DNA of 63,416 nt, the filler included, from Ministeria vibrans ATCC 50519 (Eukaryota; Protista; Filasterea): assembly GCA_943704425.1 (NCBI GenBank). It is 10 parts of 10 records of this genome, joined end to end, with 100 filler letters (N's around TTAATTAATTAA, not from the genome) between each part and the next. Parts side by side here need not be neighbours in the genome. Positions count along the whole stretch, not along the records: positions 10,628 to 30,687 come from CALSCP010001943.1; 9 more parts are not named here. One strand, 5' to 3'. Numbering within the stretch: position 1 is the first letter of the stretch; the number at the start of each line of letters is the position of its first letter. Below the pieces are notes generated by a model. The model ran no database searches, was not told the DNA's origin, and saw nothing but the letters and a program-made list of their open reading frames with translations. The translations under genes were made by a program, and so were the position numbers. This document shows, piece by piece, positions 11,296-30,687 of this stretch.

Positions 11296-12406
11296 TCAGT
11301 CAGTCAGCTCCTCTTCCTCTCCTTGCTCTGACTGATCATTATTATCGATTTCGGTCTCTGTCTCATCTTCATCTTCCTTCTCTGTTTCTTCGCGTTTCTT
11401 CTCAGCTCTCTCCCGCTCCTCCTGCTCCTACATACGCATACACATACGCATTAGCATCACATTTATATCATCATTGCATTTCCCTGCTCCAATGGCAATG
11501 CTTTTTACCTTGTCAAGACGGCTCTGCTCCTCCCGGTCGTTGCGCAACTGCGCTGCCTCTATGCGGTCCTCCTCGCACACCTGCTCTTTGTCAACCTGTT
11601 GTAGCTGCCTTACCCAAGATACCACTCCCACCGCATCCTCTCCGTCCATTGCGCCGTTTCCCTGCACACTCAGTCGCGCCAGGCGCGGCAGTCCTTCCAG
11701 TGCACGTAAACCCTCCAACTCCTCAATCGCATTCCCCCTACACAACCATCCCAATCGCATGTCAGCAGTCATTACTTTTTGTGTCACTCCACCAACCTGA
11801 TGTTAAGGTTGACCAGTCCAACAAGAGACTCGCATCCACTGAGTGTGCGGATGTCGTTGTCGCGCAAGTGGAGTGTTTCAACGCCACTCAGTGTCGACAC
11901 AATAGGCGTGGTGAGTCGCGTCAGTTGGCTCTCCGCCGCATAGAGTGTTCGCAGAGATGACGGTACAACGAGGGACTCGAGTTGATTTCCGCGCAAACAC
12001 AATTCCCTTAGTTTGGGTGTATTTGTGTCCAACAGGTTCACTGACTTCACTTCATTTCCTGGGAAAATGAAAATTTTGAGTATCATTCCGCAAAACATAA
12101 AAAAATAATTATATATATATATATATATATATAAACAAGCATTGAACTTATGCAGGCGCGTACGAGAAAGATCGAGGGACTCGAGGGCAGGCAAACTTAG
12201 ACCAGACACCGTTTGAAGTCGGTTTTCCTTGAGCGACAGACGTTGCAAATGGTCAAAGGATGAAATAGAGGACACGTCCCTCAACCGATTTTTGTCAGCG
12301 CTCAACACCAAGAGGTGCTTGGCGACGGACAGGGGCGACAAGTCTTCCAAAAAGTTATTGTTTAAATTCTACGTATAAAAAGGGACAATATATATTATGT
12401 GTCATA

Positions 12407-16611: not shown

Positions 16612-18947
16612 TATTATTATTATTATATTATTATTATTATTATATTATTATTATAATATTATTATATTATTATTATTATTTTCTTTTACTTCTTTTCACC
16701 TCTCAGATTCAAAAACTGGCTGTGGGCTCGATTCCTCGCTCGATGGTCGTGGTGTTAGAGGACGACCTGGTGGACATGTGCAAGGCGGGCGACGATGTCA
16801 TCATCAGTGGCATTGTGCGTCACCGCTGGCGTCCCGTTGTCAACGACCGTCGCTGCGACTTGGAGACAGTGATTCAGGCAAACCATGTACGCGTCAACAA
16901 CGATCAGCGAACACAACAAGAGATTACAGAAGAGCTCCGCGAGGAGTTTCGCCAGCTGTGGGAACGCGATAGAGACACCCCTTTTCGCGCACGCAATCAC
17001 ATCGTGTCAAGCCTGTGTCCTCAAGTGTACGGTCTATATGTCATCAAGTTGGCCGTCACGCTGGTGTTGGTTGGTGGCGTGCAGCGTGTAGAGCCCAGTG
17101 GAACCCGTATTCGCGGCGAGTCGCACATTCTGTTGGTGGGCGATCCGGGTACGGGCAAGTCCCAAGTGCTCAAGTTTGCGGCAAAACTGATGCCTCGCTC
17201 GGTGCTGACAACGGGTGTGGGCACCAGCTCGGCAGGACTGACCGTGACTGCTGTCAAGGATTCGGGTGAGTGGCAGCTCGAGGCGGGAGCCCTTGTACTT
17301 GCAGACGGTGGTGTGTGTTGCATCGATGAGTTTGGTGGCATTCGTGAACACGATCGGGGTTCCATTCACGAGGCGATGGAGCAGCAGACACTGAGCGTGG
17401 CCAAGGCGGGCCTCGTTTGCAAATTAAACACACGCACCACCGTGATCGCGGCCACCAATCCCAAGGGTACCTTTGACCCGCAGGAGTCCATTGCGGTCAA
17501 CGTCGCCATTGCCAGTCCACTGCTCAGTCGCTTCGATTTGGTCATGGTGCTCCTTGACTCTCGCGACGAAGCCTGGGATCGCGTCGTTTCGTCGTTTATT
17601 CTGGAAAAGCGCGACAAGATTGGTTCGCGACGTCCGACGACTTTGAGGCACGACCACCGTGGAAAGCGAAAGACGAAAAGGGGACCAGTGCAGGGTGATG
17701 GAAATGGTGGGAATGAACATGCTGATGAAGCGAGCGAGGTCGACGTCGACGACGACGACGACGATGATGATGACGCCGACGAAGATGAGGAGGAGGAGGA
17801 TGCTGCGGATGGCAACGAGGCGGCTGCGGATCCCAATGAGCCGGCGAACCCTTGGTCGATTGAGAAGCTTCAGGCATACCTGTGTTATGTCAAAGCCAAC
17901 TTCCATCCAACTATGTCTCCCGACGCAGAGATGATTTTGAGTCGCTACTACCAAATCCAGCGTCTTTCGGACCAACGCAACGCCGCTCGAACCACCATTC
18001 GCATGCTTGAAAGCCTTGTGCGCATAGCACAGGCGCACGCGCGACTCATGTGTCACACGAGCGTTGCCATTGAGGACGCCGTCGTGGCCGTGACGCTCGT
18101 CGAGTCGTCCATGCAAGGTGGTGCGTTGCTCGGCATCACCGACGCTATGCGTGCGCTCTTTCCCGACGACCCCGACGCCCAGTTTGCCCAGCAGCAAGAG
18201 ATTGTTCTGCAGCGGCTGTCATTTGCCTACCGGCCTAACAACAATGGTGATGGCGACAGTCAGTCTCCTGTTCGTGGTGGTAGCGACCGTGGTAGTGACC
18301 GTGGCCACTCTGCCACACCGGAAGGCTCGCCAGTGCGACGTAGATTGCCACTGCGAGAACAAGCGAGCCCCTCGCGCCAGCTCACAGTCGAAAAGAGCCT
18401 CGATGGTATCCGCTGCGATCTTGCCATGCGCCAAGTTCGTGATCAGCACCAAATCGAAGACTGCGAAGCAATGATACGCCAAGAGGTGGAAATGGCCATG
18501 CGTAGCAATGGACCTGCACCTGTCAGTGCCACGGGTGCCGCTAACCGGCCCGCCCACGAGAAACGGCCACATCCCGACCCCGCTCCCAATGGGTCCGCGT
18601 CACCGAGGCGGGTGCGTGTGCCGGCCTTTGTCTCAGCCGTAGATCGGCCCAGCGACGGTGAAGACGATGACGGGATGGACTTGGAGCTGGATATGGATGA
18701 AGATGATCTCATTTTGACCGAACACAGAGAGCGACACAAACAACTGCTGCAACAACAACAGCAACAACCAGTTTCGGATGCAGCTCCTCACTCTACCAAC
18801 AACAACAACGACAACAACAACAACAACAACGTCAACAACAATGACAACAACAACAATAACGATGACGATGACGACGACGGCATGTCGTGGAGCCTGTCTC
18901 CACCCGAGTTCCCTGTGGCCAAGCGACGCTTTGTCGAAGATGTATAG
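15587..18947 (+). CDS. MCM9: DNA helicase MCM9
   Basis: [79 protein letters not shown] and [14 protein letters not shown]; OB/zinc-finger N-terminus. Confidence 0.93.
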
Positions 18948-18982: not shown

Positions 18983-20350
18983 TCAGAACTCCAGAGCAAT
19001 TGTCCAATCGCCGCCGATGGACAGGCCGGGTTTCTTGATGTCGATGCGTTTGGTGGCGGGGTCCTGAGTGAAGGGCAGGGTGGTCTGGCGCAGGCCGCCG
19101 CCCAGGGTAACACGCTGCAACAGGCGCTGCTCGCCCACAATGACCACTCGCTCCACGTACTCTTGCGTGTTGTAGCTACCCGCGAGCAGAGCAGAGCTTG
19201 TCAACTGTACAACGCAAGAGTTTTTGTTACGCAACGAACGTCTTCACTTGATTTGGTTGGCTTACCTTTGAGTCATGGTAGACAAAGTTACGGAGAAGGT
19301 ACTCGCCGTCCATGAAGCGCAGTGAGTCACGGTCGTCAAGGTAAAGACTGCCTGAGGCATTGTGTGCAGCGTTGAGCGCAACAAAGAGAGTATATGGGTC
19401 GTTGGTCATGACATGCGACGACCGACGCACGCGCATCTTGCGGGGAATGATGGAGCCGGCGCGCTGGAAGGCGACCGTCTTGCTGAGCGGACAGGCGACG
19501 GTGACAGTGCCAGGGGCAGTTGCCTTGAGCGTGTCCATGTCGTACCACACCTCAGATCCCGGAAGGTAGGTACTCACTGAGTGTGTTCCGGACTGAGAAA
19601 AGAAAACAAAAATAAATCATAGATAATATTATGAAAGAGTAAGAGAATGAGAATAAGAAAGAAAATGAGAAAGAGAATGAGAAAGAAAATGAGAAAGAAG
19701 AAAGAGAAAAACACAAAGTGATAGAGAGAGGGAGAGAGAGACGCGGGCGTCAAAGACAACTTTACACAGAACAAGGAGGCAACAAACAAAGTAATTATTA
19801 TTATAATAAAACTACCTTTGAGACGGGATGAACAAGAATGTCGGCGCCCAGGAGGAAGGCATTGTCGAGGGTGAAAGTGCGAACGTCCGTGGGATACTCC
19901 ATCCAGAGGGGCCGCATGACAGGCAAGGCCGTGGTATTGGCAAAGTGGAAGAGTGTGTAGAGGTAGGGAAGAAGCTGGTAGCGACGACGGATGCTGTCGC
20001 GGATTGGCTTCTGGTAAAGAGGCTCGAACAGGTAGGGTTCGCGACGCTTGGCGTCGAGATGGGCGTGAGCGCGGAAGAAGGGCTGGTAGGCGCCTGCCTG
20101 GTACCAGCGCACCATGAGCTCGGCGTCAGGGTTGCCAAAAAAGCCGCCCACGTCAGCTCCGACAAAGGGCAGGCCCGCCAGAGAGGTGCCCAGCAGCATC
20201 GGCACCGACGCCTCCAGATGATCCCATGCTGCCGTATTGTCTCCTGTCCAGATCGCCCCAAACCGCTGTGACCCGGCAAAGTAGGCGCGCGACAGAACAA
20301 AAGGACGGCGCAGTCCCTGCGAACGGTCCAACAGTCCTTCATAAGTCGCC
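18983..20350 (-). CDS. GANAB: GH31 glucosidase II alpha subunit, C-terminal half only
   Basis: [77 protein letters not shown] and [12 protein letters not shown]. The WxDMNE nucleophile region is not found upstream. Confidence 0.9.
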
Positions 20351-20412
20351 TGCAAAAAAAAAAAGGGAGAAAACACAATTGCTGGGAGTCGTTCGGAGGG
20401 AGTGAGCGGGTA

Positions 20413-20620
20413 CCGAGGCAAGCCCAAGGTCAGCAAAGGGGTTGACGCTGATGAGAACGGCCTCGCCAATCCAGGTGAAGAGGGTGTTCGCTTCAAAGCG
20501 CTCCGCAAGCACTGTCGTCATGGCGTCCGACGTGCCCGCCCGCATGATGCGCAGGTCGCCCGCTGCCTGTGCGTTGAAGAACGACAGCCCCGACGAGGGT
20601 CCTTCTGCGTCTCTGTTCAT
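20413..20620 (-). CDS. Myosin motor-domain N-terminal exon (isolated)
   Basis: [45 protein letters not shown] fits the myosin DL..L..RF...YT.IG..LISVNPF motif. Confidence 0.8.
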
Positions 20621-21271: not shown

Positions 21272-24200
21272 ATGCCCATCGTCAAGACACTCGTCTGGTA
21301 CGTGGACGACCGTGACTTTTGGTCGAGGAAGTTGATCACCTCTCAGGCGTCCGCGTCAATCGAGATCAACACTGCGGAGAACGTCTCTGTTGCCGTAGCG
21401 GCCGCTTGTCACGCTCTCGATGCGCCCCATTGCGCTCACGAGAGTACCCTTGTTCTAAATGACGGCATTTTTTCCTCGGGAAAATCGTCCGAGCGTATCT
21501 TCTTGGATGCGGACCAATCTTTTGACGACCAGTTTCGCACACAGTTTGACGGCACTCTGCCCAAGGTGAGTTTCCATCTTTCTCGGCCAGCGGTCAGCGC
21601 CTCTGTACGATATCGTGAACGAAATTCATTTTGTGCACACGTTCGCGCCTGAAGCGAACCTGAAGCATTGTCTATTTCTCGAAGTTGGAAATTTTTTAGT
21701 GTTGTTTTTTGGCGATATATCCCGAAACCGTCTCGATTTTTGCTCACACTTTGTCCAGTATTATTGTATTGTTCAACTGGGTTTCGCTTCGTTGTGCAAA
21801 ACTGCAAATGCAGGACGCGAATCAATGCCGAAGACTAACAAACATTATTGTTGTTGTTTTCTTCCCAGCTTGACTCGCTCTCGCTGCGCACCAAATTGTC
21901 GGTGCGTGTCGAGCGGTGTCTCGATAGCCTCCGCGGCAATCCGCACTCCTTTTTGCGGCTCACCCGCTCGCTGCGCCATGTTATCGAGAAAGAGACCGAC
22001 TTTGCGCAGAATTTCATTGTCTCTGGCGGACTTGTGTGTCTGTTGCGTATCAGCATCGAATACAATGCCACGGCACAGTGCCACGCCTTGCGCGTTCTGA
22101 GTGCTTCTATTCGCTATGTCGACGGCATGAAGATGGCCCTCGAGAGCGAAGCTCTCGTGGCGCTCATCTATGCGATCCTGGTGAATACGACAGGTGAAAA
22201 TTCGATGCTGGCTGCCCTCGAAGTCCTTGAGACCATGGTAGGCCATGCGCGGCGCGCGCGAAACCCTTCCTTCACCATGTCCATTGTGCGCTGCGCCAAA
22301 CAGAATGCTATTGAGGACGGCAATCCCGTCTTCTCGTCGCTTGTCGCGCTGCTCAAAGAGTCTCTTCACAACGAGACTCTCGCGGCGCGTCTCATGGCCT
22401 TTGTGTCGGCCATTATAAGCAGCTTTGTCGACTTTGAAGAGAGTGATCCTGTCAAAGAGGCACAACTATCAGCGCAATTTATTGAGACGTGCGCGCTGCT
22501 CGCGAAGGCGGGACTGCAGGCAGTCGCAGAGACGGTCATGGCGAAGGAGGTGTCGTCGGATGTCACAAAGAGCCGCGCAGCCGAGTACCAAGCGCTGGTG
22601 GAGGATGCACGGGCGCGCGAAGCGGAGTGCATAAAGACGCGTGCAGCATCAACGGTGTCAGTGCAGCAATCGGAGGAGGCTCTGCTGCTGAGCACGCCGA
22701 CAGAGGCAACTGTGTCCGCAGTGCGCTTGGCTCGTCTGGACAAATCTCGGGCACAAATTGTAGAAGAGCGCGATCAGATTGAGTTGACTCTACGACCCGG
22801 TGTGTTCTTTCCCGAGGGAACCGCAGACAGCACCGCAGCCACAAGCACAACAACAGAAACACGGCCGACAGTGATTGTCACTGATTCGTCTGTGGCATCT
22901 CAGAAGCACGCTGGCGAGGCACAGAAACAGGGAGAGCCGTCGGTGTCAGTCTCACAGTCGCCAGGTGGAACAGCCGCGCGCGAAAACGATGGACACTGTC
23001 GGAGAACAATGAGTGAGAAGAAGCGGTCGCGCAAATTGCGCCAAAAGAGTCTCGAGATGCAACGAGCGCAACTGTCGTCGATCCTGCTTAAGAGTAGAGC
23101 AGCAAGTGGAATTCGTACTGGTGATGGTGCTGGTAGAGCGAGTGAGGTGGAAATTTTTTCCGCATCAGAAGCCAACCTGGACTCGTCTGAGGTCGCGGCT
23201 CAACTTGATTCGTCTGCGAGGCAAGGCAGCAGCAGCTCCGAGTCGCACAGCGCGTCGCCTCTCAGTACGACACTGAAGAACCTGGAACTGTGTCGTGTGG
23301 TGAGTGAGGTTGAACCCCCACGCACGAGACTTCTCAGAGATAGGCAAGAGGTGTGTGGCAACGACATTGAATCAGCTCTGTCGAAGACTGCGAGTGCGAA
23401 TTGTGAGAGTGCGGCAGCACGGGACTCGCTGAAACCGCCATCGTCGCAGCGCCCAGCCTCGGCATTGCGTTCAAGAAGCCTTTTGGACAGTTCAACGTTG
23501 GTGCATGAGCGAGCAGCTTCTGCGCGAAAGACGACTGTGTCACAGAACAGCATGTCGCAGACGGACAGGAAGAGTGACCCTACAATGGCCAGTGAAGGGA
23601 ATGTGGGCCTATTTGAGGAAGATGTTCGTCGGTATGTGCGTACGCAGAAGGGCACTGTCACGGAGAGTGCCTTGCAGCAGATGACCCAAGTCGTGAACTG
23701 GAGTTCGAACGCGCAGGACGGAATGGATATCATTGCGTATGTGGATGGGAAAAGGGTCTGTTTGTTCCAACAGACCGAGTTTGGTGATGAAGTGCTCGAT
23801 GGGCCAGTGGTGACTCTTGGCGGGCATTTGAGGGGTGTCACCAGTCTGGCGTTGTCATCCGATGGCAAATGGCTTCTCAGTGCTTCGTGGGACAGGTCAG
23901 TCAAAGTGTGGAATGCGAAACGGTTCGTTCTGTCGCGTACGATTCACACTGATCATTGGAGGTATTCTACTTGCAACCGCACAGTTTCTTTTAACACTTG
24001 TGTGTCCATCTTCCCTCTTGCTTTTTTTTTCCAGTGGAATTCATTGTCTATCACTTTTTGCCGATGGAAAGAAAATTCTCACTGGCTCAGCGGATCGCAC
24101 GTTGAAAATCATCTCGTTTGAGACTGGCGCACGCCTTTTGACTTTTAGAGGACACGAAGAGTACGAGTCGCACAATTTTTTTTTGTGTGTGTACCTGTGG

Positions 24201-25587: not shown

Positions 25588-26398
25588 CTTGAGAATATCC
25601 ATTTGTGGATAGGGTTCGGGTAGTCCTTTTTTCAGTGCGCGTGGATTGATTTCAAAAAGGGCGTCGCAGTCAATGGCACACTGCACATTGCGACGCACAC
25701 GCTCCAGTGTTGAGTGTGGCAGCGCAAAAGATTGGCGAAACATCCGAATCAGATCAAAATGACCCACAATGGTCGGTCGTAATCGCTCAATGACAGCATA
25801 TCTGCAACAACAAACCAACACAGACGCATGAGAATGAAGCTGTGGTGGTGCGTAAGACACACACGACAACAGTCGTACTGGTGATCGAGATAGTCGTTGA
25901 AACAGGCTTCGGTGCTTCCACTCAGCGCCTCGGCCTTGTCGTACAGGTCGGCTGAGAAGTCGCACGGGACACTGCGAACATGATGGACGGCACCCACAAC
26001 AAAGTCGAGACGGAAGCGCTCCTTCAAGACCTTCACTCGCTCAATGTCCGCCTCTCGAATGTACTCCGTCTCCATGCCCACCGTGATATAGATGACACCG
26101 GCATACTTGGCCTGTAGACGACGTGCCTCGCCCACGTATGCGGCAAACTGCGCGTCCAGCTCGACCGGAGTCATATTCAACTGCAACGCGTTGGATGAGA
26201 CGAGAGGGCTTTTCCCCTCTCCTCTGCCCTTACCTCCACCTCTTCGGGATACAGATCTTCCTGGAGCTCGCGAGGTGCATGTTCGGAGAGTCCGAGGTGC
26301 GAGAAGTCAAGTGCGATGGCGCGCTGCACGATCGACTCGAGAGTGCCCGTCGCATGTTTGCAAAACTCACCCGAGTGGCAATGGAAGGTGAAAGGCAT
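25588..26398 (-). CDS. PHP-family histidinol-phosphatase (HIS2/HisK type); last exon not seen
   Basis: FHCHSGEFCKHA..LGLSEHAPR..DLYPEE, VGMETEYI, DFVVGAVHHV, VGHFDLIR and FEIN..ALKKGLPEPYP. Confidence 0.88.
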
Positions 26399-26693
26399 CA
26401 CGATCAATCACAACAGTAGTTTGAGCCGCGAAGACCTCTGACCAGTTTGAAAACCAAGTGAAGAACTCTCAACTGATCAAGTCATCAAGAACAAGTGTGT
26501 TATATAGACTTATAGTACAATGATGAATGAAGAGAAATATAAATATACAATGCTTCCGTCATAGACTAGTCCCAAGAAGATGGAGCAGCAAAAGCACCCG
26601 TAAGCCCACAAATGTCAAATACACTCTTGCAGCAAGCGCACGAAGAATTGGAATACTTAAATACGAGAACATTGGTCGAAAAAAACGACGTCT

Positions 26694-29600
26694 TCATTTG
26701 ACCCAAAACTCTTGACCAGAGAGCGCAGGAAGATACTCACGAGCCACAACAGCCACCATATCCGCAACAGTGGAAGGATCAAGCAAATCAGCATCCTCGC
26801 CCTATCCCCAAGTGCAAGCCCCAGAGGTTGCTCAGTGTCAAAAAGTACAAACGCTCGACACACATATCACACACAGACACACACAACATACAGACACAAC
26901 ACAGCACACAAGGAGTTTGGGGGTTTTTTCTCTTTCTTTTCTTTACCTCATCCGGATACAATGTTTGCCTAAGCTGGGTTCGTGTGCGTCGGGGCACAAC
27001 AGAATACGCAAAGATGTTCCAAGGTTTCCCTTCCAGTGCCAGTGTCTCCGTCAGCGAGGCAAGACCCGCCTTACTCGCCGCATACGCTCCCTCTCCTACG
27101 CGCACCCAATCCATACAAAACAAGAATTTAGTGTGTAAACTGAAAAAAAAAGAGAGAGGGAAAAACAAAGTGATAGGTTGAAAGACACACAAAATAATAT
27201 TAACATAATAACAATTGCAAGAAGGGTGAGACATTATACCTTCGCGCCCTCCTCGTACCGCACTCGACGTGACATTGATTATGACTCCCCCTCTCTTTTT
27301 CATACATTCCATTGCCTGTGAAAATTCCATCAGCACAAATGAAACATGTACAGGCGTTAAATGAAGACGAAAACGATTCATATTATATAAAATATAATAA
27401 TTATAATAATAATAATAATTAATTATATACATAATTATTATAATATTATATACATATAATTATATATATATCACCTCGCGAGCAGCGTAAAAGGACCCTG
27501 ACAGATTCACAGCAACGTGTTCAGCCCATACATCATCACTCTACATACACAAGCACAGTCAGTCAGTCCTTTCTTGTTTATGTACAGTCACTCATATTAA
27601 AGCAGGACATAAGAGAGGGAAAGAGGAAATGTTACACCAATAATAATTAATCATTATTTTAAGTAAGACGTAACTGTGTCTGTGATGAGAGTGCGCTGGG
27701 CCATTGCTGCGTTGTTCACCAGCACATCCACTTGCCCATACACCTCAATCACTCGCTGAAACACCATTTGCACATTCTCGCTCTACAAAAATAAAAAGAC
27801 GTCTTAGTAATAATTATAAATAATAAAACAAAAAATAGTAATAATAATAATTATTATTTTTACTCTAGTGTTCTTATGTGTTATCTTAAAATTAATCAAA
27901 ATAATATTACATGAATATTTTGTGATCCGACATTTATAATTAATATTACCCGACTGACATCCGCAACCACTGCCAATCCCCCGACACTCTGTGCGACGGA
28001 CTCTGTCTCCTCCTTATTCCGTCCCACCACTGCAACCTATAATGTTATTTCATACACAAACGGGAACACTAATCAGTGCAGTCAATTGTGTCGAAGGGAG
28101 ATATGCATATACTCAATCAAACCTCAAATGAAAACACACGCACACGGCACACGATAATTAATTTGTAATTTATTATTGTTATTATCATCATTAATATTAG
28201 TAAAACATATTCACAACAACAGCAATATCAGCATAAATCTAAACATAATGAGAATAGAACAATGCTGCTTCTGATCAGATCCGATCCATAAGTGGTATCG
28301 CGGCCGCTCACTTGGTACTCTCCTTAATTAATGCGGTTCAACTCACCTTCATCCCGAGCGCACTGAGTTTCCCCGCCACTGCCGCACCAATCCCCCGACT
28401 CCCGCCCGTCACTATCGCAACCCGACGCAACCGCTCTACGTGACGCAATCAATCATTTACATCAATAATGGTCGGTTTAAGATGTATACGTCGTACCTCT
28501 GATCATTTGTTCTGCTGCGTAAACATCAGGTTTGTACGTCACCTACACACACAATCAAACACAACGTAGATAAGTATATTATATTCAATACGTCATATTA
28601 ACGCAACGTACGCGTTAACACTGATCCAAAATAACGCGGTTGAATTTGTCGTATCTTTGTATCGGTGTACCTTCCAGAGATCAAGGGGTCCGTCCAGAAG
28701 TCGCGCACGCACTCCCGAGTGAGTGTGCGCCAAGTGAAGACACTCAGTGCCAAACTCAAAATCGTGTTCTGTACACTAGAATCAAACCATGGACATTATG
28801 ATACATTTGTTTCTTCTTCGCCTTCAGCTAAATTGCCATTGTGATTGATCGTATCGTACTTTGTCGTATGCCAATTTGATGACACTGTACCAAAACGCCT
28901 GCGGAGTTTGGCTGGCACGGTAGAGCGACCGGTCGAGTGACTGGTCGAGAAACCCGTTGGAATCCACTGAAATGACAGTGGACACGAGCGGACGAATCAT
29001 GCCTGCTGCCTATGTACGCAGTCGATGATCAATTGCAACCATCCTCCTTTTAATTTAATTTGACGATATCGATGCATAGTATAGTGTAACCGACACCTTG
29101 TGCTCGTGTGCTGACTGTGTGACACGTCGAAGAGTCGGCTCGTCGACAAAGGGACGCACCACATCATGGATGATCACCTACAGGTAAGAGAACACAATAA
29201 TTAGTACGTTCCTATTTTTTTTTCACTATATATCATACCACATCGTCTTCGTGCGCTTCGTGACGCAGAAAATTGACACCGCTTTGAAGTGATCTGTGGC
29301 GTGTCGAGCCTCCCACGGCACAGACGACTCGCTCAGAGAACTCCCAAGATTTCAGCGCCTGTCCATCGTCTCAGTTAACATTTGCCTTCACACGCCAGAA
29401 CGTCACACACACATACACACACCTCTTCCATTGCATTCAATTCTTCAGCGGCAACCACAAGAACAGTCTTGTCGATCCACGGAATCCTACAAAATTCATA
29501 TTGTGTGACACTGAGTGATTTTGCTTTGTGATTCTCATTCTCTCGTGAGTTGCACATCACGTACCTTGCAAACACCTCAATAGTATAGTACATCAAAGGA

Positions 29601-29771
29601 CGGTCGTAGATAACCCAGTGCTGCTTCGGCAGCGGCATTCCAGCGCGTGTTCCTGCGTAAACAACAAAAACCCATTTCCGTTTGAGCATATAACTTTGGA
29701 ACTTCCATCAAACCTGTTCCGCCCGCCGGCAGCACAGCATACACCTTCCCTTTAATAGGTCGATCCGACAT
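26694..29771 (-). CDS. ISPD/CRPPA-type cytidylyltransferase fused to a complete classical SDR (putative bifunctional CDP-ribitol synthase), about 14 exons
   Basis: ISPD part: VLPAGGTG|TRAGMPLPKQHW..RPLMYYT, GGSTRHRSL, IIHDVVRPFVDE, AAGMIRPLVSTV, RASQTPQAF, DFEFGTECLHLA, DLWK|VTYKPDVYAAE. SDR part: VAIVTGGSRGIG, VVGRN, ADVS, VDVLVNNAA, VNLSG, IINVTSS, YAASK, PRRTRTQLR, LLDPSTVA..SGQEFWVK*. Confidence 0.9.

Positions 29772-30579: not shown

Positions 30580-30687
<108 letters not shown>

What the first reader, a model, noticed from the sequence alone, without database searches (positions are those of the whole stretch)
26694..29771. Animal-type ISPD/CRPPA fused to an intact SDR reductase: a putative single-enzyme CDP-ribitol pathway in a unicellular eukaryote
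Seen: about 14 GT-AG exons splice into one frame. The N-terminal half carries motifs typical of animal ISPD (RPLVSTV, DxEFGTECL, DLWKVTYKxDxYAAE). A clean 61-nt phase-1 intron (28436-28496) with no homopolymer or microsatellite joins it to a complete SDR with TGGSRGIG, basic GRN (NADPH type), NNAA, catalytic S..YAASK and a PxRTxTxxR..E..LLxPxxVA..GQ tail. Established: human ISPD makes CDP-ribitol for alpha-dystroglycan glycosylation (FKTN/FKRP), and its C-terminal domain is a degenerate SDR-like fold. Haemophilus Bcs1 is a bifunctional cytidylyltransferase plus ribulose-5-phosphate reductase with this same domain order. Inference: this gene may keep the ancestral bifunctional state from which animal ISPD decayed, implying de novo ribitol-5-P/CDP-ribitol synthesis and ribitol-phosphate glycans in an animal relative. 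The high intron density argues against bacterial contamination or recent transfer. The ORF track misses the fusion because the exons are tiny.
Basis: partly seen in the sequence, partly recalled or inferred. Interest (0 to 1): 0.88.

Follow-up and report, generated by a model that had tools for sequence, protein, structure and literature searches.

The report
Fused CDP-ribitol synthase gene, protist
This is a real, intron-rich gene of a unicellular relative of animals that joins an animal-type ribitol-phosphate cytidylyltransferase (ISPD/CRPPA) to an intact reductase; the same fusion already sits uncharacterised in databases for other animal relatives, and it shows that the puzzling tail of human ISPD is a decayed reductase.

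Summary
On the minus strand, 29771..26694, 15 GT-AG exons give a 464-aa open frame. Residues 1-237 are an ISPD-type cytidylyltransferase and residues 238-464 a complete classical SDR. Spliced cDNA contigs from four runs confirm 12 of the 14 introns. The domain-joining intron 8 (28496-28436) and intron 5 were not bridged. The joint is supported indirectly: the model aligns in one piece with the fused proteins of Capsaspora and Pigoraptor (57.5% and 58.3% identity) and keeps all 59 columns invariant in 21 fused relatives.

The fusion is not unique. It is present in filastereans, at least six choanoflagellates and several prokaryotes (Bcs1-like CDP-ribitol synthases, 36-52% identity).

In trees the cytidylyltransferase domain lies apart from MEP-pathway IspD. 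The window's protein is sister to the animal ISPD clade (97/90). A profile comparison shows that the animal ISPD C-terminal domain is a colinear, degenerate copy of this SDR (score 44.4 against 11.5±1.8 for shuffles).

The same genome encodes an FKRP homologue, LARGE/B4GAT1-type and POMT-type enzymes, but no clear dystroglycan.

Verdict: a new member of a known kind. Enzyme activity is untested.

The parts
26694..29771 (-). Whole coding region of the fused cytidylyltransferase-SDR gene: 15 exons, 14 introns, 464 aa.
   Evidence: Model built. End-to-end single-HSP alignment with Capsaspora P0166 and Pigoraptor P0039.
29714..29771 (-). Exon 1: start ATG at 29771 and the first part of the LPAGGTGTR nucleotide-binding loop. 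The 5'UTR reaches at least 29850.
   Evidence: X3 contig covers 29713-29850 and skips intron 1.
29565..29652 (-). Exon 2: ...GTRAGMPLPKQ..., carrying the catalytic Arg and Lys of the IspD fold.
   Evidence: Introns 1 and 2 confirmed.
29423..29486 (-). Exon 3.
   Evidence: Introns 2 and 3 confirmed.
29239..29358 (-). Exon 4: GGSTRHRS motif.
   Evidence: Introns 3 and 4 confirmed.
29097..29177 (-). Exon 5: HDVVRPF motif.
   Evidence: Intron 4 is confirmed. Intron 5 (29096-29010) is not bridged by any contig.
28860..29009 (-). Exon 6: AAGMIRPLVSTV...SQTPQAF, the most ISPD-specific exon.
   Evidence: Pfam IspD. Human ISPD 4CVH at E 7e-11 against bacterial IspD at 0.02. 212 hits in the representative library.
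28671..28775 (-). Exon 7: DFEFGTECL...DLWK.
   Evidence: Introns 6 and 7 confirmed.
28497..28542 (-). Exon 8: VTYKPDVYAAEQMIR plus the first base of a Glu codon. This is the end of the cytidylyltransferase domain.
   Evidence: An X1 contig ends inside this exon at about 28520.
28436..28496 (-). Intron 8: 61 nt, phase 1, GT..AG. It joins the two domains. If retained, the frame stops after six more codons.
   Evidence: No contig bridges it. The spliced linker AAE-xxxx-ER-x-R-x-VA-x-VTGG has exactly the length and conserved residues of 21 fused relatives.
28347..28435 (-). Exon 9: start of the SDR, with beta1 and the TGGSRGIG cofactor loop.
   Evidence: Pfam adh_short positions 1-26. Intron 9 confirmed.
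27950..28036 (-). Exon 10: beta2 VAVVGRN (basic residue, NADP(H)-type) and ADVS.
   Evidence: Introns 9 and 10 confirmed.
27675..27782 (-). Exon 11: NNAA motif.
   Evidence: Pfam adh_short positions 62-92. Introns 10 and 11 confirmed.
27475..27540 (-). Exon 12: VNLSG, carrying the Asn of the SDR catalytic tetrad.
   Evidence: Contig pieces 27474-27540 and 27239-27314 lie in one record.
27240..27315 (-). Exon 13: NVTSS, carrying the catalytic Ser. An alternative donor at 27258/27257, seen in one contig, gives a premature stop.
26947..27095 (-). Exon 14: YAASK (catalytic Tyr and Lys) and VVPRRTRTQLR.
   Evidence: Pfam adh_short E 1.7e-8, positions 148-193. Introns 13 and 14 confirmed.
26694..26801 (-). 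Exon 15: the tail LLDPSTVA...LSGQEFWVK and stop TGA. This tail is the stretch still recognisable in animal ISPD_C.
   Evidence: Contigs reach 26673.

Best explanation
The locus is one nuclear gene of a unicellular holozoan-like eukaryote. It encodes a 464-aa two-domain enzyme.

The N-terminal domain is an ISPD/CRPPA-type cytidylyltransferase. The C-terminal domain is a catalytically complete, NADP(H)-type classical SDR. The order is the same as in the bacterial bifunctional CDP-ribitol synthase Bcs1/Acs1.

The most likely mechanism is as follows. The SDR reduces a pentose phosphate (D-ribulose-5-P by analogy with Bcs1) with NADPH to D-ribitol-5-P. The cytidylyltransferase then couples this with CTP to give CDP-ribitol and pyrophosphate. 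CDP-ribitol would feed LicD-family ribitol-phosphate transferases such as the FKRP homologue encoded elsewhere in the genome.

Shown here: the gene structure, the expression of both halves, the intact motifs, the family relations, and the homology of animal ISPD_C to this SDR. Inferred: the splicing of intron 8 in vivo, the substrates, the order of the two reactions, and the glycan end product.

In evolutionary terms the fused state is shared by filastereans, choanoflagellates and the nearest prokaryotic relatives. Animal ISPD is nested among them, so animals most probably inherited the fusion and let the reductase half decay into the ISPD_C domain.
For: Gene model:
- 15 GT-AG exons and one frame. 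Exon GC is 54% against 33% for introns.
- 12 of 14 introns are confirmed by spliced contigs of four runs. Both halves are covered at similar depth.

Fusion:
- One blastp HSP covers residues 9-464, with Capsaspora P0166 (57.5%) and Pigoraptor P0039 (58.3%).
- All 59 columns invariant among 21 fused relatives are kept, in both domains and in the linker.
- Complete fused ORFs occur in transcriptomes of Salpingoeca helianthica, Savillea parva and Pigoraptor, and fused annotated genes in Capsaspora and S. rosetta.

Cytidylyltransferase identity:
- Exon 6 scores E 7e-11 against 4CVH and 0.02 against IspD.
- In the careful tree the family is separated from MEP IspD at 100/99, and the window is sister to the animal clade at 97/90.

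SDR identity:
- adh_short hits by exon.
- TGGSRGIG, GRN, NNAA, N, S and YAASK are all present.

Function by homology:
- Prokaryotic full-length relatives at 36-52% identity. Sources name two of them 'bifunctional cytidylyltransferase/SDR family oxidoreductase' and 'ribitol-5-phosphate 2-dehydrogenase (NADP+) / D-ribitol-5-phosphate cytidylyltransferase'.
- One of them sits in an operon with a TagF-type polyol-phosphate transferase.
- Bcs1 domain order: PMC4017328. Mouse ISPD makes CDP-ribitol: PMC4873967.

Pathway context: an FKRP homologue (FKRP_N plus LicD; E 1e-43 against 6KAJ), Glyco_transf_49 and PMT loci in the same genome.

Decay hypothesis:
- hhalign of animal ISPD_C against the fused SDR gives local E 3e-6 and a colinear global alignment with P 1e-7. 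Column shuffles score 11.5±1.8, maximum 15.6, against 44.4 for the real alignment.
- The Foldseek alignment of the fused model to 4CVH runs over 486 columns, that is through both domains.
Against: - No read or contig spans the exon 8-exon 9 joint or intron 5, so a cytidylyltransferase-only isoform cannot be excluded.
- One contig shows an unproductive alternative donor in exon 13.
- No enzyme assay exists for any eukaryotic fused member, and the substrate of an SDR cannot be read from sequence.
NCBIfam has no full-length model, and the orthologs score below the curated cut-offs of both the ispD and the ribitol-5-P cytidylyltransferase models.
- Monophyly of all eukaryotic sequences is unresolved in the cytidylyltransferase tree (open polytomy), so the number and direction of transfers between prokaryotes and holozoans is open.
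- The joined protein itself was used only in local scripts. It was not sent to the large databases or the folding tools.
Confidence: 0.72

Rival explanations
1. The fused enzyme is real but makes a different CDP-alditol, or works in the reverse order (cytidylyl transfer first, then reduction of the CDP-keto-sugar), as in Campylobacter jejuni CDP-6-D-glucitol synthesis.
For: SDR substrate specificity cannot be read from sequence. C. jejuni HS5.18/HS5.17 show the alternative order with an IspD-like transferase and an SDR (PMC10918830). No assay exists for this clade.
Against: The cytidylyltransferase domain is sister to animal ISPD, whose best substrate is ribitol-5-P (PMC4873967; tree). The C. 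jejuni reductase is a separate protein. The genome carries FKRP, a CDP-ribitol user. The prokaryotic relatives are named CDP-ribitol synthases and lie next to a TagF-type transferase.
Confidence: 0.15
2. Two products rather than one: intron 8 is mostly retained, or transcription ends there. This would give a 243-aa cytidylyltransferase, and the SDR exons would belong to a separate transcript.
For: The joint is the one place, with intron 5, that the contigs do not bridge. Retention would add only six codons before a stop.
Against: Exon 9 has no start codon of its own in frame and begins in phase 1. The spliced linker matches 21 fused relatives residue for residue, with no indel. The intron is 61 nt with GT..AG, like the confirmed introns 1 and 4. 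Depth is similar on both halves. Complete fused ORFs exist in relatives' transcriptomes.
Confidence: 0.07
3. The SDR half is already a non-catalytic (structural or regulatory) domain, as in animals.
For: In animals the homologous domain has no known activity, yet disease mutations fall in it (PMC4873967). This suggests a structural role that could be older than the loss of catalysis.
Confidence: 0.04
4. Bacterial contamination or a very recent transfer wrongly assembled into a eukaryotic contig.
For: Prokaryotic relatives reach 50-52% identity.
Against: There are 14 spliceosomal introns, 12 of them confirmed in cDNA contigs. The neighbours are eukaryotic (MCM9, GH31, WD40). The nearest relatives are holozoan proteins at 57.5-58.3% identity.
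Confidence: 0.01

Closest known systems
Fused ISPD-SDR proteins of unicellular holozoans: Capsaspora owczarzaki 'notch1-induced protein' (P0166), Pigoraptor vietnamica (P0039), Salpingoeca rosetta PTSG_07710 (P0173), and S. helianthica, Savillea parva and Bicosta minor transcripts.
   Same: Same two domains in the same order and the same linker. Identity over the full length is 46-58%. All family-invariant residues are shared.
   Different: The organism is different (best identity only 58%). In the cytidylyltransferase tree the window's protein branches next to animals rather than with Capsaspora and Pigoraptor. None of these proteins has been characterised, as far as the held literature shows.
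Haemophilus influenzae Bcs1/Acs1 and related prokaryotic 'bifunctional cytidylyltransferase/SDR family oxidoreductase' proteins (CDP-ribitol synthases).
   Same: An N-terminal IspD-like cytidylyltransferase plus a C-terminal FabG-like reductase (PMC4017328). Full-length colinear homology with prokaryotic members at 36-52% identity. An operon link to polyol-phosphate transferases.
   Different: This is a eukaryotic, intron-rich gene. The likely acceptors are protein or other eukaryotic glycans made via FKRP-type enzymes, not capsule or teichoic acid.
Animal ISPD/CRPPA (human structure 4CVH).
   Same: The cytidylyltransferase domain is about 50-54% identical, and the two are sister groups in the tree. 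The C-terminal domains are homologous and colinear.
   Different: The animal C-terminal domain (Pfam ISPD_C) is about 60 residues shorter. It lacks the glycine loop, NNAG and the Ser-Tyr-Lys residues. Here the domain is a complete SDR.
TarI/TarJ of Gram-positive bacteria, and MEP-pathway IspD.
   Same: The same cytidylyltransferase fold. TarI makes the same product.
   Different: TarJ is an unrelated reductase on a separate chain. MEP IspD is separated from this family at 100/99 support in the tree and uses a different substrate.

Membership tests
ISPD/CRPPA-type D-ribitol-5-phosphate cytidylyltransferase (N-terminal domain) | IspD-fold domain detected by profile. | tested here: met
   Exon 6 matches Pfam IspD positions 128-172. 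In the six-frame genome search the score is 31.7 bits with neighbouring pieces, over the cut-off of 27. The joined model was not scanned against Pfam.
ISPD/CRPPA-type D-ribitol-5-phosphate cytidylyltransferase (N-terminal domain) | Closer to animal ISPD than to MEP IspD or TarI. | tested here: met
   4CVH at E 7e-11 against IspD at 0.02 for exon 6. Sister to the animal clade at 97/90, with IspD outgroups split off at 100/99.
ISPD/CRPPA-type D-ribitol-5-phosphate cytidylyltransferase (N-terminal domain) | Conserved nucleotide-binding and catalytic residues: GxGxR, PKQ, HDxVRPF, SQTPQ, K-x-T-x-x-D. | tested here: met
   All are present, and all invariant columns are kept.
ISPD/CRPPA-type D-ribitol-5-phosphate cytidylyltransferase (N-terminal domain) | Degenerate ISPD_C domain (PF18706) at the C-terminus, as in animals. 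| tested here: not met
   The C-terminal half is an intact adh_short SDR. It is homologous to ISPD_C but not degenerate.
ISPD/CRPPA-type D-ribitol-5-phosphate cytidylyltransferase (N-terminal domain) | CTP + ribitol-5-P gives CDP-ribitol. | not testable with these tools
   Needs an enzyme assay.
Bcs1/Acs1-type bifunctional CDP-ribitol synthase | One polypeptide with an N-terminal cytidylyltransferase and a C-terminal FabG-like SDR. | tested here: met
   The definition comes from PMC4017328. The exon 8-9 joint is supported by colinearity only, not by reads.
Bcs1/Acs1-type bifunctional CDP-ribitol synthase | Full-length homology to prokaryotic members. | tested here: met
   36-52% identity over residues 9-464 to P0169, P0170, P0081, P0176 and P0186. 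Names as given by the sources.
Bcs1/Acs1-type bifunctional CDP-ribitol synthase | Direct similarity to the biochemically characterised H. influenzae protein. | not tested
NCBIfam holds no full-length model.
Bcs1/Acs1-type bifunctional CDP-ribitol synthase | NADPH-dependent ribulose-5-P reductase activity, with reduction preceding cytidylyl transfer. | not testable with these tools
   Needs an enzyme assay.
Classical short-chain dehydrogenase/reductase | The TGxxxGxG loop, the NNAG-type motif and the Asn-Ser-Tyr-Lys tetrad. | tested here: met
MEP-pathway IspD | Groups with 2-C-methyl-D-erythritol-4-P cytidylyltransferases and reaches the equivalog score. | tested here: not met
   Separated at 100/99 in the tree. 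The orthologs score 153-155 bits against a cut-off of 181 for TIGR00453.

The most novel reading that the evidence does not exclude
Unicellular holozoans, this organism included, still run a one-enzyme de novo route from a pentose phosphate to CDP-ribitol. They inherited it as a unit from a Bcs1-like prokaryotic gene before animals arose. Animals then lost the reductase activity on their stem lineage and kept the domain as the ISPD_C relic, which is why the source of ribitol-5-P in mammals became a separate, still debated problem. The window's protein, as the fused form branching closest to animals, would be the best living proxy for the last active ancestor.
Probability: 0.55. Interest if true: 0.6.

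Novelty: new member of a known kind. Interest (0 to 1): 0.5.

Why it matters
Human ISPD/CRPPA mutations cause dystroglycanopathies. The enzyme's C-terminal half has no assigned function, and the origin of its substrate ribitol-5-P in mammals is unsettled (PMC4873967; PMC8478517 lists it as 'produced by an unknown enzyme').

The intact fused enzymes of animal relatives give a concrete explanation for that domain: it is a decayed ribulose-5-P reductase. They also offer a tractable protein for testing what the ancestral enzyme did. With FKRP, LARGE-type and POMT-type genes in the same genome but no clear dystroglycan, they support the view that ribitol-phosphate glycans predate their best-known animal substrate.

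This window by itself adds one more ortholog to a set that is already in the databases.

Tried and rejected
- Joined model. The joined 464-aa model was not sent to any search, family, folding or atlas tool. It was searched exon by exon by reference, and the joined sequence was used only in local scripts. Structure was therefore predicted for the Pigoraptor ortholog (58% identical), not for the window's own protein.
- Read evidence for intron 8. They stop at about 28520 and 28391, so the joint stays untested.
- The Riemersma 2015 paper on the ISPD structure and the Follens 1999 paper on Acs1 are not held. I could not check whether the SDR-likeness of the human C-terminal domain is already published.
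- The search for related loci in bacterial genomes returned mostly stand-alone IspD at 27-36% identity and missed the close fused relatives. I used it only for outgroups.
- NCBIfam gave no family above its curated cut-off.
- The LicD-motif ORF L004 found no homologue at E <= 1e-5, so fukutin could not be identified. L005 matches FKRP only marginally.
- The dystroglycan Pfam model gave one sub-threshold hit (19 bits). I treat this as no evidence of dystroglycan.
- The organism could not be named. The neighbouring MCM9 exon is 68-74% identical to animal and choanoflagellate MCM9, which fits a holozoan but does not place it.
- VIA-align on the whole two-domain model listed only SDRs, so it gave no separate measure for 4CVH's C-terminal domain.
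Full report
**1. What is in the sequence**

The finding lies on the minus strand. Translating the three minus-strand frames between 29800 and 26600, and joining the open stretches at GT..AG borders, gives 15 exons:

- exon 1: 29771-29714
- exon 2: 29652-29565
- exon 3: 29486-29423
- exon 4: 29358-29239
- exon 5: 29177-29097
- exon 6: 29009-28860
- exon 7: 28775-28671
- exon 8: 28542-28497
- exon 9: 28435-28347
- exon 10: 28036-27950
- exon 11: 27782-27675
- exon 12: 27540-27475
- exon 13: 27315-27240
- exon 14: 27095-26947
- exon 15: 26801-26694

The CDS is 1395 nt and encodes 464 aa, with ATG at 29771 and TGA at 26696-26694. The introns are 61-310 nt long. Exons are 54.3% G+C and introns 33.0%.

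**2. Is it transcribed and spliced as modelled?**

Four runs of one study (X1-X4, kept as assembled contigs) hold pieces of the locus that skip introns. They are therefore cDNA-derived.

- The joints match my introns 1, 2, 3, 4, 6, 7, 9, 10, 11, 12, 13 and 14.
- The contigs run from 29850 (5'UTR) to 26673 (3'UTR).
- Depth is low (about 3-5), so the contigs are short. One ends inside exon 8 at about 28520, and the next begins inside exon 9 at about 28391.
- Intron 8, the joint between the two domains, and intron 5 are therefore not bridged. This is a gap in evidence, not evidence against the model.
- One contig (X4) uses an alternative donor at 27258/27257 in exon 13. That shifts the frame to a stop 14 codons into exon 14, so it is an unproductive form.
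- If intron 8 were retained, the protein would end six codons after exon 8.

**3. Indirect support for the joint**

- The model aligns in a single blastp segment, residues 9-464, with the fused proteins of Capsaspora owczarzaki (P0166, 57.5% identity) and Pigoraptor vietnamica (P0039, 58.3%). It does the same with some twenty further full-length fused proteins.
- The linker produced by splicing intron 8 (…AAEQMIR-ER-L-R-R-VA-I-VTGG…) has the same length as the family consensus and the same conserved residues (AAExxxxERxRxVAxVTGG).
- All 59 columns that are invariant among 21 fused relatives are kept in the window's protein.
- Exon 9 starts in phase 1 and has no start codon of its own.
- Complete fused ORFs exist in the transcriptome-derived protein sets of Pigoraptor, Salpingoeca helianthica and Savillea parva.

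I put the fused transcript at about 0.9.

**4. What the two halves are**

Searched exon by exon by reference, Pfam finds IspD in exon 6 and adh_short in exons 9, 11 and 14, at successive profile positions.

*Cytidylyltransferase half.*
- Against solved structures, exon 6 matches human ISPD (4CVH) at E 7e-11 and bacterial MEP IspDs only at about 0.02.
- A HMMER scan of 1.84 billion representatives with exon 6 returned 212 proteins. Most are 350-450-aa animal ISPDs without any similarity to the SDR half. A handful carry the intact SDR.

*SDR half.*
- It carries TGGSRGIG, a basic residue after beta2 (VAVVGRN), NNAA, and the Asn, Ser and YAASK residues.
- From general knowledge of classical SDRs, the two basic positions indicate NADP(H). 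This is an inference.

*Structure of the ortholog.*
- The AlphaFold model of the Pigoraptor ortholog, made with an alignment of 21 fused proteins, has pLDDT 90.
- The best Foldseek hit for the whole model is human ISPD (E 1e-30). The alignment covers 486 columns, so it runs through both domains.

**5. Who else has it**

The fusion is not unique to this genome. With Pfam IspD plus adh_short it occurs in:

- Capsaspora (annotated 'notch1-induced protein');
- Salpingoeca rosetta (PTSG_07710);
- Pigoraptor;
- S. helianthica, Savillea parva, Bicosta minor, Barroeca monosierra and an uncultured choanoflagellate;
- environmental contigs;
- prokaryotes, namely Anaerolineae MAGs at 50-52% identity to the model and a Clostridia MAG named 'bifunctional cytidylyltransferase/SDR family oxidoreductase';
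- a protein that JGI names 'ribitol-5-phosphate 2-dehydrogenase (NADP+) / D-ribitol-5-phosphate cytidylyltransferase'.

One prokaryotic copy overlaps by its stop codon a TagF-type polyol-phosphate transferase gene, a teichoic-acid-like operon.

The biochemically studied H. influenzae Bcs1 has the same order: an IspD-like N-terminus and a FabG-like reductase at the C-terminus (PMC4017328). It makes CDP-ribitol from ribulose-5-P. I could not obtain its sequence, so the link to Bcs1 runs through its annotated relatives.

**6. Trees**

*Cytidylyltransferase domain (careful tree, 44 rows, rooted on four MEP IspDs).*
- The family (fused proteins plus animal ISPD) is separated from IspD at 100/99.
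- Animals form a clade at 100/99.
- The window's protein is sister to the animals at 97/90.
- A larger clade (96/96) adds Capsaspora, Pigoraptor, S. helianthica and two environmental fused proteins.
- The remaining choanoflagellate and prokaryotic groups form an unresolved polytomy. A single eukaryotic clade is therefore neither shown nor rejected.

*SDR domain (quick tree).*
- The holozoan fused proteins form one clade (96), together with P0182/P0183, a long-branch pair of unknown origin. The window branches first within it.
- The Anaerolineae-like proteins lie next to this clade in an unresolved fork.

The two halves thus tell a compatible story, so the fusion was inherited as a unit. Since everything around the animal clade is fused, the simplest reading is that the SDR decayed on the animal stem.

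One unfused protein of unknown origin (P0014, on a long branch) sits beside S. helianthica. It may mark a second loss.

**7. Is the animal C-terminal domain a decayed SDR?**

Gerin et al. 2016 call it a part 'of unknown function', and I could not read the structure paper, so I tested this directly.

- I compared a profile of 150 animal C-terminal regions with a profile of 23 fused SDR halves.
- The local alignment has E 3e-6 over 63 columns. It is centred on the family-specific tail (…LTETLALEGKP.I..Y.V…VA…P.LSGQ.FWV).
- The global alignment is colinear from beta1 onward with P 1e-7. The gaps fall where the glycine loop and other SDR elements are missing.
- 150 column shuffles of the SDR alignment scored 11.5±1.8 (maximum 15.6), and the reversed alignment 11.8, against 44.4 for the real one.

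The relation is therefore real at the sequence level.

**8. Context in the same genome**

The assembly is 29.7 Mb in 2860 contigs.

- It has only this one IspD-like locus.
- It encodes a clear FKRP homologue with the FKRP stem domain plus LicD (E 1e-43 against human FKRP 6KAJ).
- It has two further LicD-motif ORFs of unclear identity.
- It has at least four loci with the LARGE/B4GAT1-type Glyco_transf_49 domain.
- It has three POMT-type PMT loci.
- The dystroglycan model gives only a sub-threshold hit.

This agrees with the published finding that choanoflagellates have the matriglycan enzymes but no dystroglycan (PMC8478517). That paper did not analyse ISPD.

The neighbouring genes are ordinary eukaryotic ones: MCM9, a GH31 glucosidase, WD40 and LRR proteins, and a PHP-domain protein. 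The MCM9 exon is 68-74% identical to animal and choanoflagellate MCM9. This fits a holozoan but does not name it.

**9. Mechanism, and how sure**

*Shown:* one expressed, intron-rich gene, both domains under constraint, and the family relations.

*Inferred:*
- The SDR reduces ribulose-5-P (or a close pentose phosphate) with NADPH to ribitol-5-P.
- The cytidylyltransferase makes CDP-ribitol.
- FKRP-type transferases use it.

*Rivals:*
- a different alditol or the reverse order, as in C. jejuni CDP-glucitol synthesis, at about 0.15;
- separate products through retention of intron 8, at about 0.07;
- a non-catalytic SDR, at about 0.04;
- contamination, excluded by the spliced contigs.

**10. Novelty**

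Searches of the held literature found no paper that links CDP-ribitol or ISPD with Capsaspora, choanoflagellates or holozoans beyond a reference-list coincidence. The library is incomplete, however, and the proteins themselves are public.

I therefore file the window's gene as a new member of a known kind, the Bcs1-like bifunctional CDP-ribitol synthases and their holozoan branch. The point of wider interest is the evolutionary reading of animal ISPD_C, which applies to the whole holozoan set and not specifically to this window.

**11. Limits**

Only exon references and database orthologs were.

Noticed in passing
window 27240-27315 (exon 13), alternative donor at 27258/27257: One cDNA contig (run X4) splices 19 nt earlier. 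The frame then stops 14 codons into exon 14, before the catalytic Tyr-Lys. It is probably an unproductive isoform or splicing noise. Run X1 has the canonical joint.
   Followed up: partly
window 29422 and 26868: A contig in X1 joins these two distant places with three letters between them. Both places lie in (CA)n-rich sequence, so this looks like an assembly artefact at a microsatellite.
   Followed up: no
window 16722-18947 (+): A long exon of an MCM9 helicase gene. The best database matches are animal and choanoflagellate MCM9 at 68-74% identity over the first 330 residues.
   Followed up: partly
window 19230-20508 (-): Exons of a glycoside hydrolase family 31 (alpha-glucosidase-type) gene: Pfam Glyco_hydro_31 TIM-barrel domain (E 4e-54) and C-terminal domain.
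   Followed up: partly
window 26180-26407 (-), about 290 bp downstream of the finding's stop codon: First exon of a PHP-domain protein (histidinol-phosphatase-like) on the same strand. A divergent gene starts about 130 bp upstream of the finding's ATG (29899 onward, + strand).
   Followed up: partly
window 11787-12350 (-) and 21848-24118 (+): A leucine-rich-repeat protein, and a large ORF with an FH3-like region and WD40 repeats. Function not pursued.
   Followed up: no
L003:1573-2709 (-) = G000:C1674: An FKRP homologue with the FKRP stem domain plus the LicD catalytic domain (E 1e-43 against human FKRP). It is a likely consumer of CDP-ribitol in the same genome.
   Followed up: partly
L004:994-2376 (-) and L005:1066-2004 (-): Two further ORFs with only the N-terminal LicD motif. 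L004 found no homologue at E <= 1e-5 among 5.8 billion proteins. Whether either is a fukutin counterpart is open.
   Followed up: partly
G000:C1856, C1535, C2497, C716; C481, C2675, C2431: At least four loci with the LARGE/B4GAT1-type Glyco_transf_49 domain and three POMT-type PMT loci. Only a sub-threshold dystroglycan hit (C2595).
   Followed up: partly
L001:4245-6790: In an Anaerolineae-like MAG the fused CDP-ribitol-synthase-like gene overlaps by four bases a TagF-type Glyphos_transf gene. A GT4 glycosyltransferase and a PMT_2 protein lie nearby. This looks like a polyol-phosphate glycopolymer cluster in a phylum not known for teichoic acids.
   Followed up: no
protein P0014 (408 aa, one 1.3-kb public contig): An ISPD-like protein without detectable SDR similarity. 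It sits beside Salpingoeca helianthica on a long branch, outside the animal clade. It may be a second, independent decay of the reductase half.
   Followed up: no
window 27387-27473, 27810-27867, 28166-28203 and 30640-30687: The introns hold long AT-rich trinucleotide and dinucleotide runs ((AAT)n, (AT)n). The piece ends in a (GA)n microsatellite. (CA)n tracts flank several exons.
   Followed up: no
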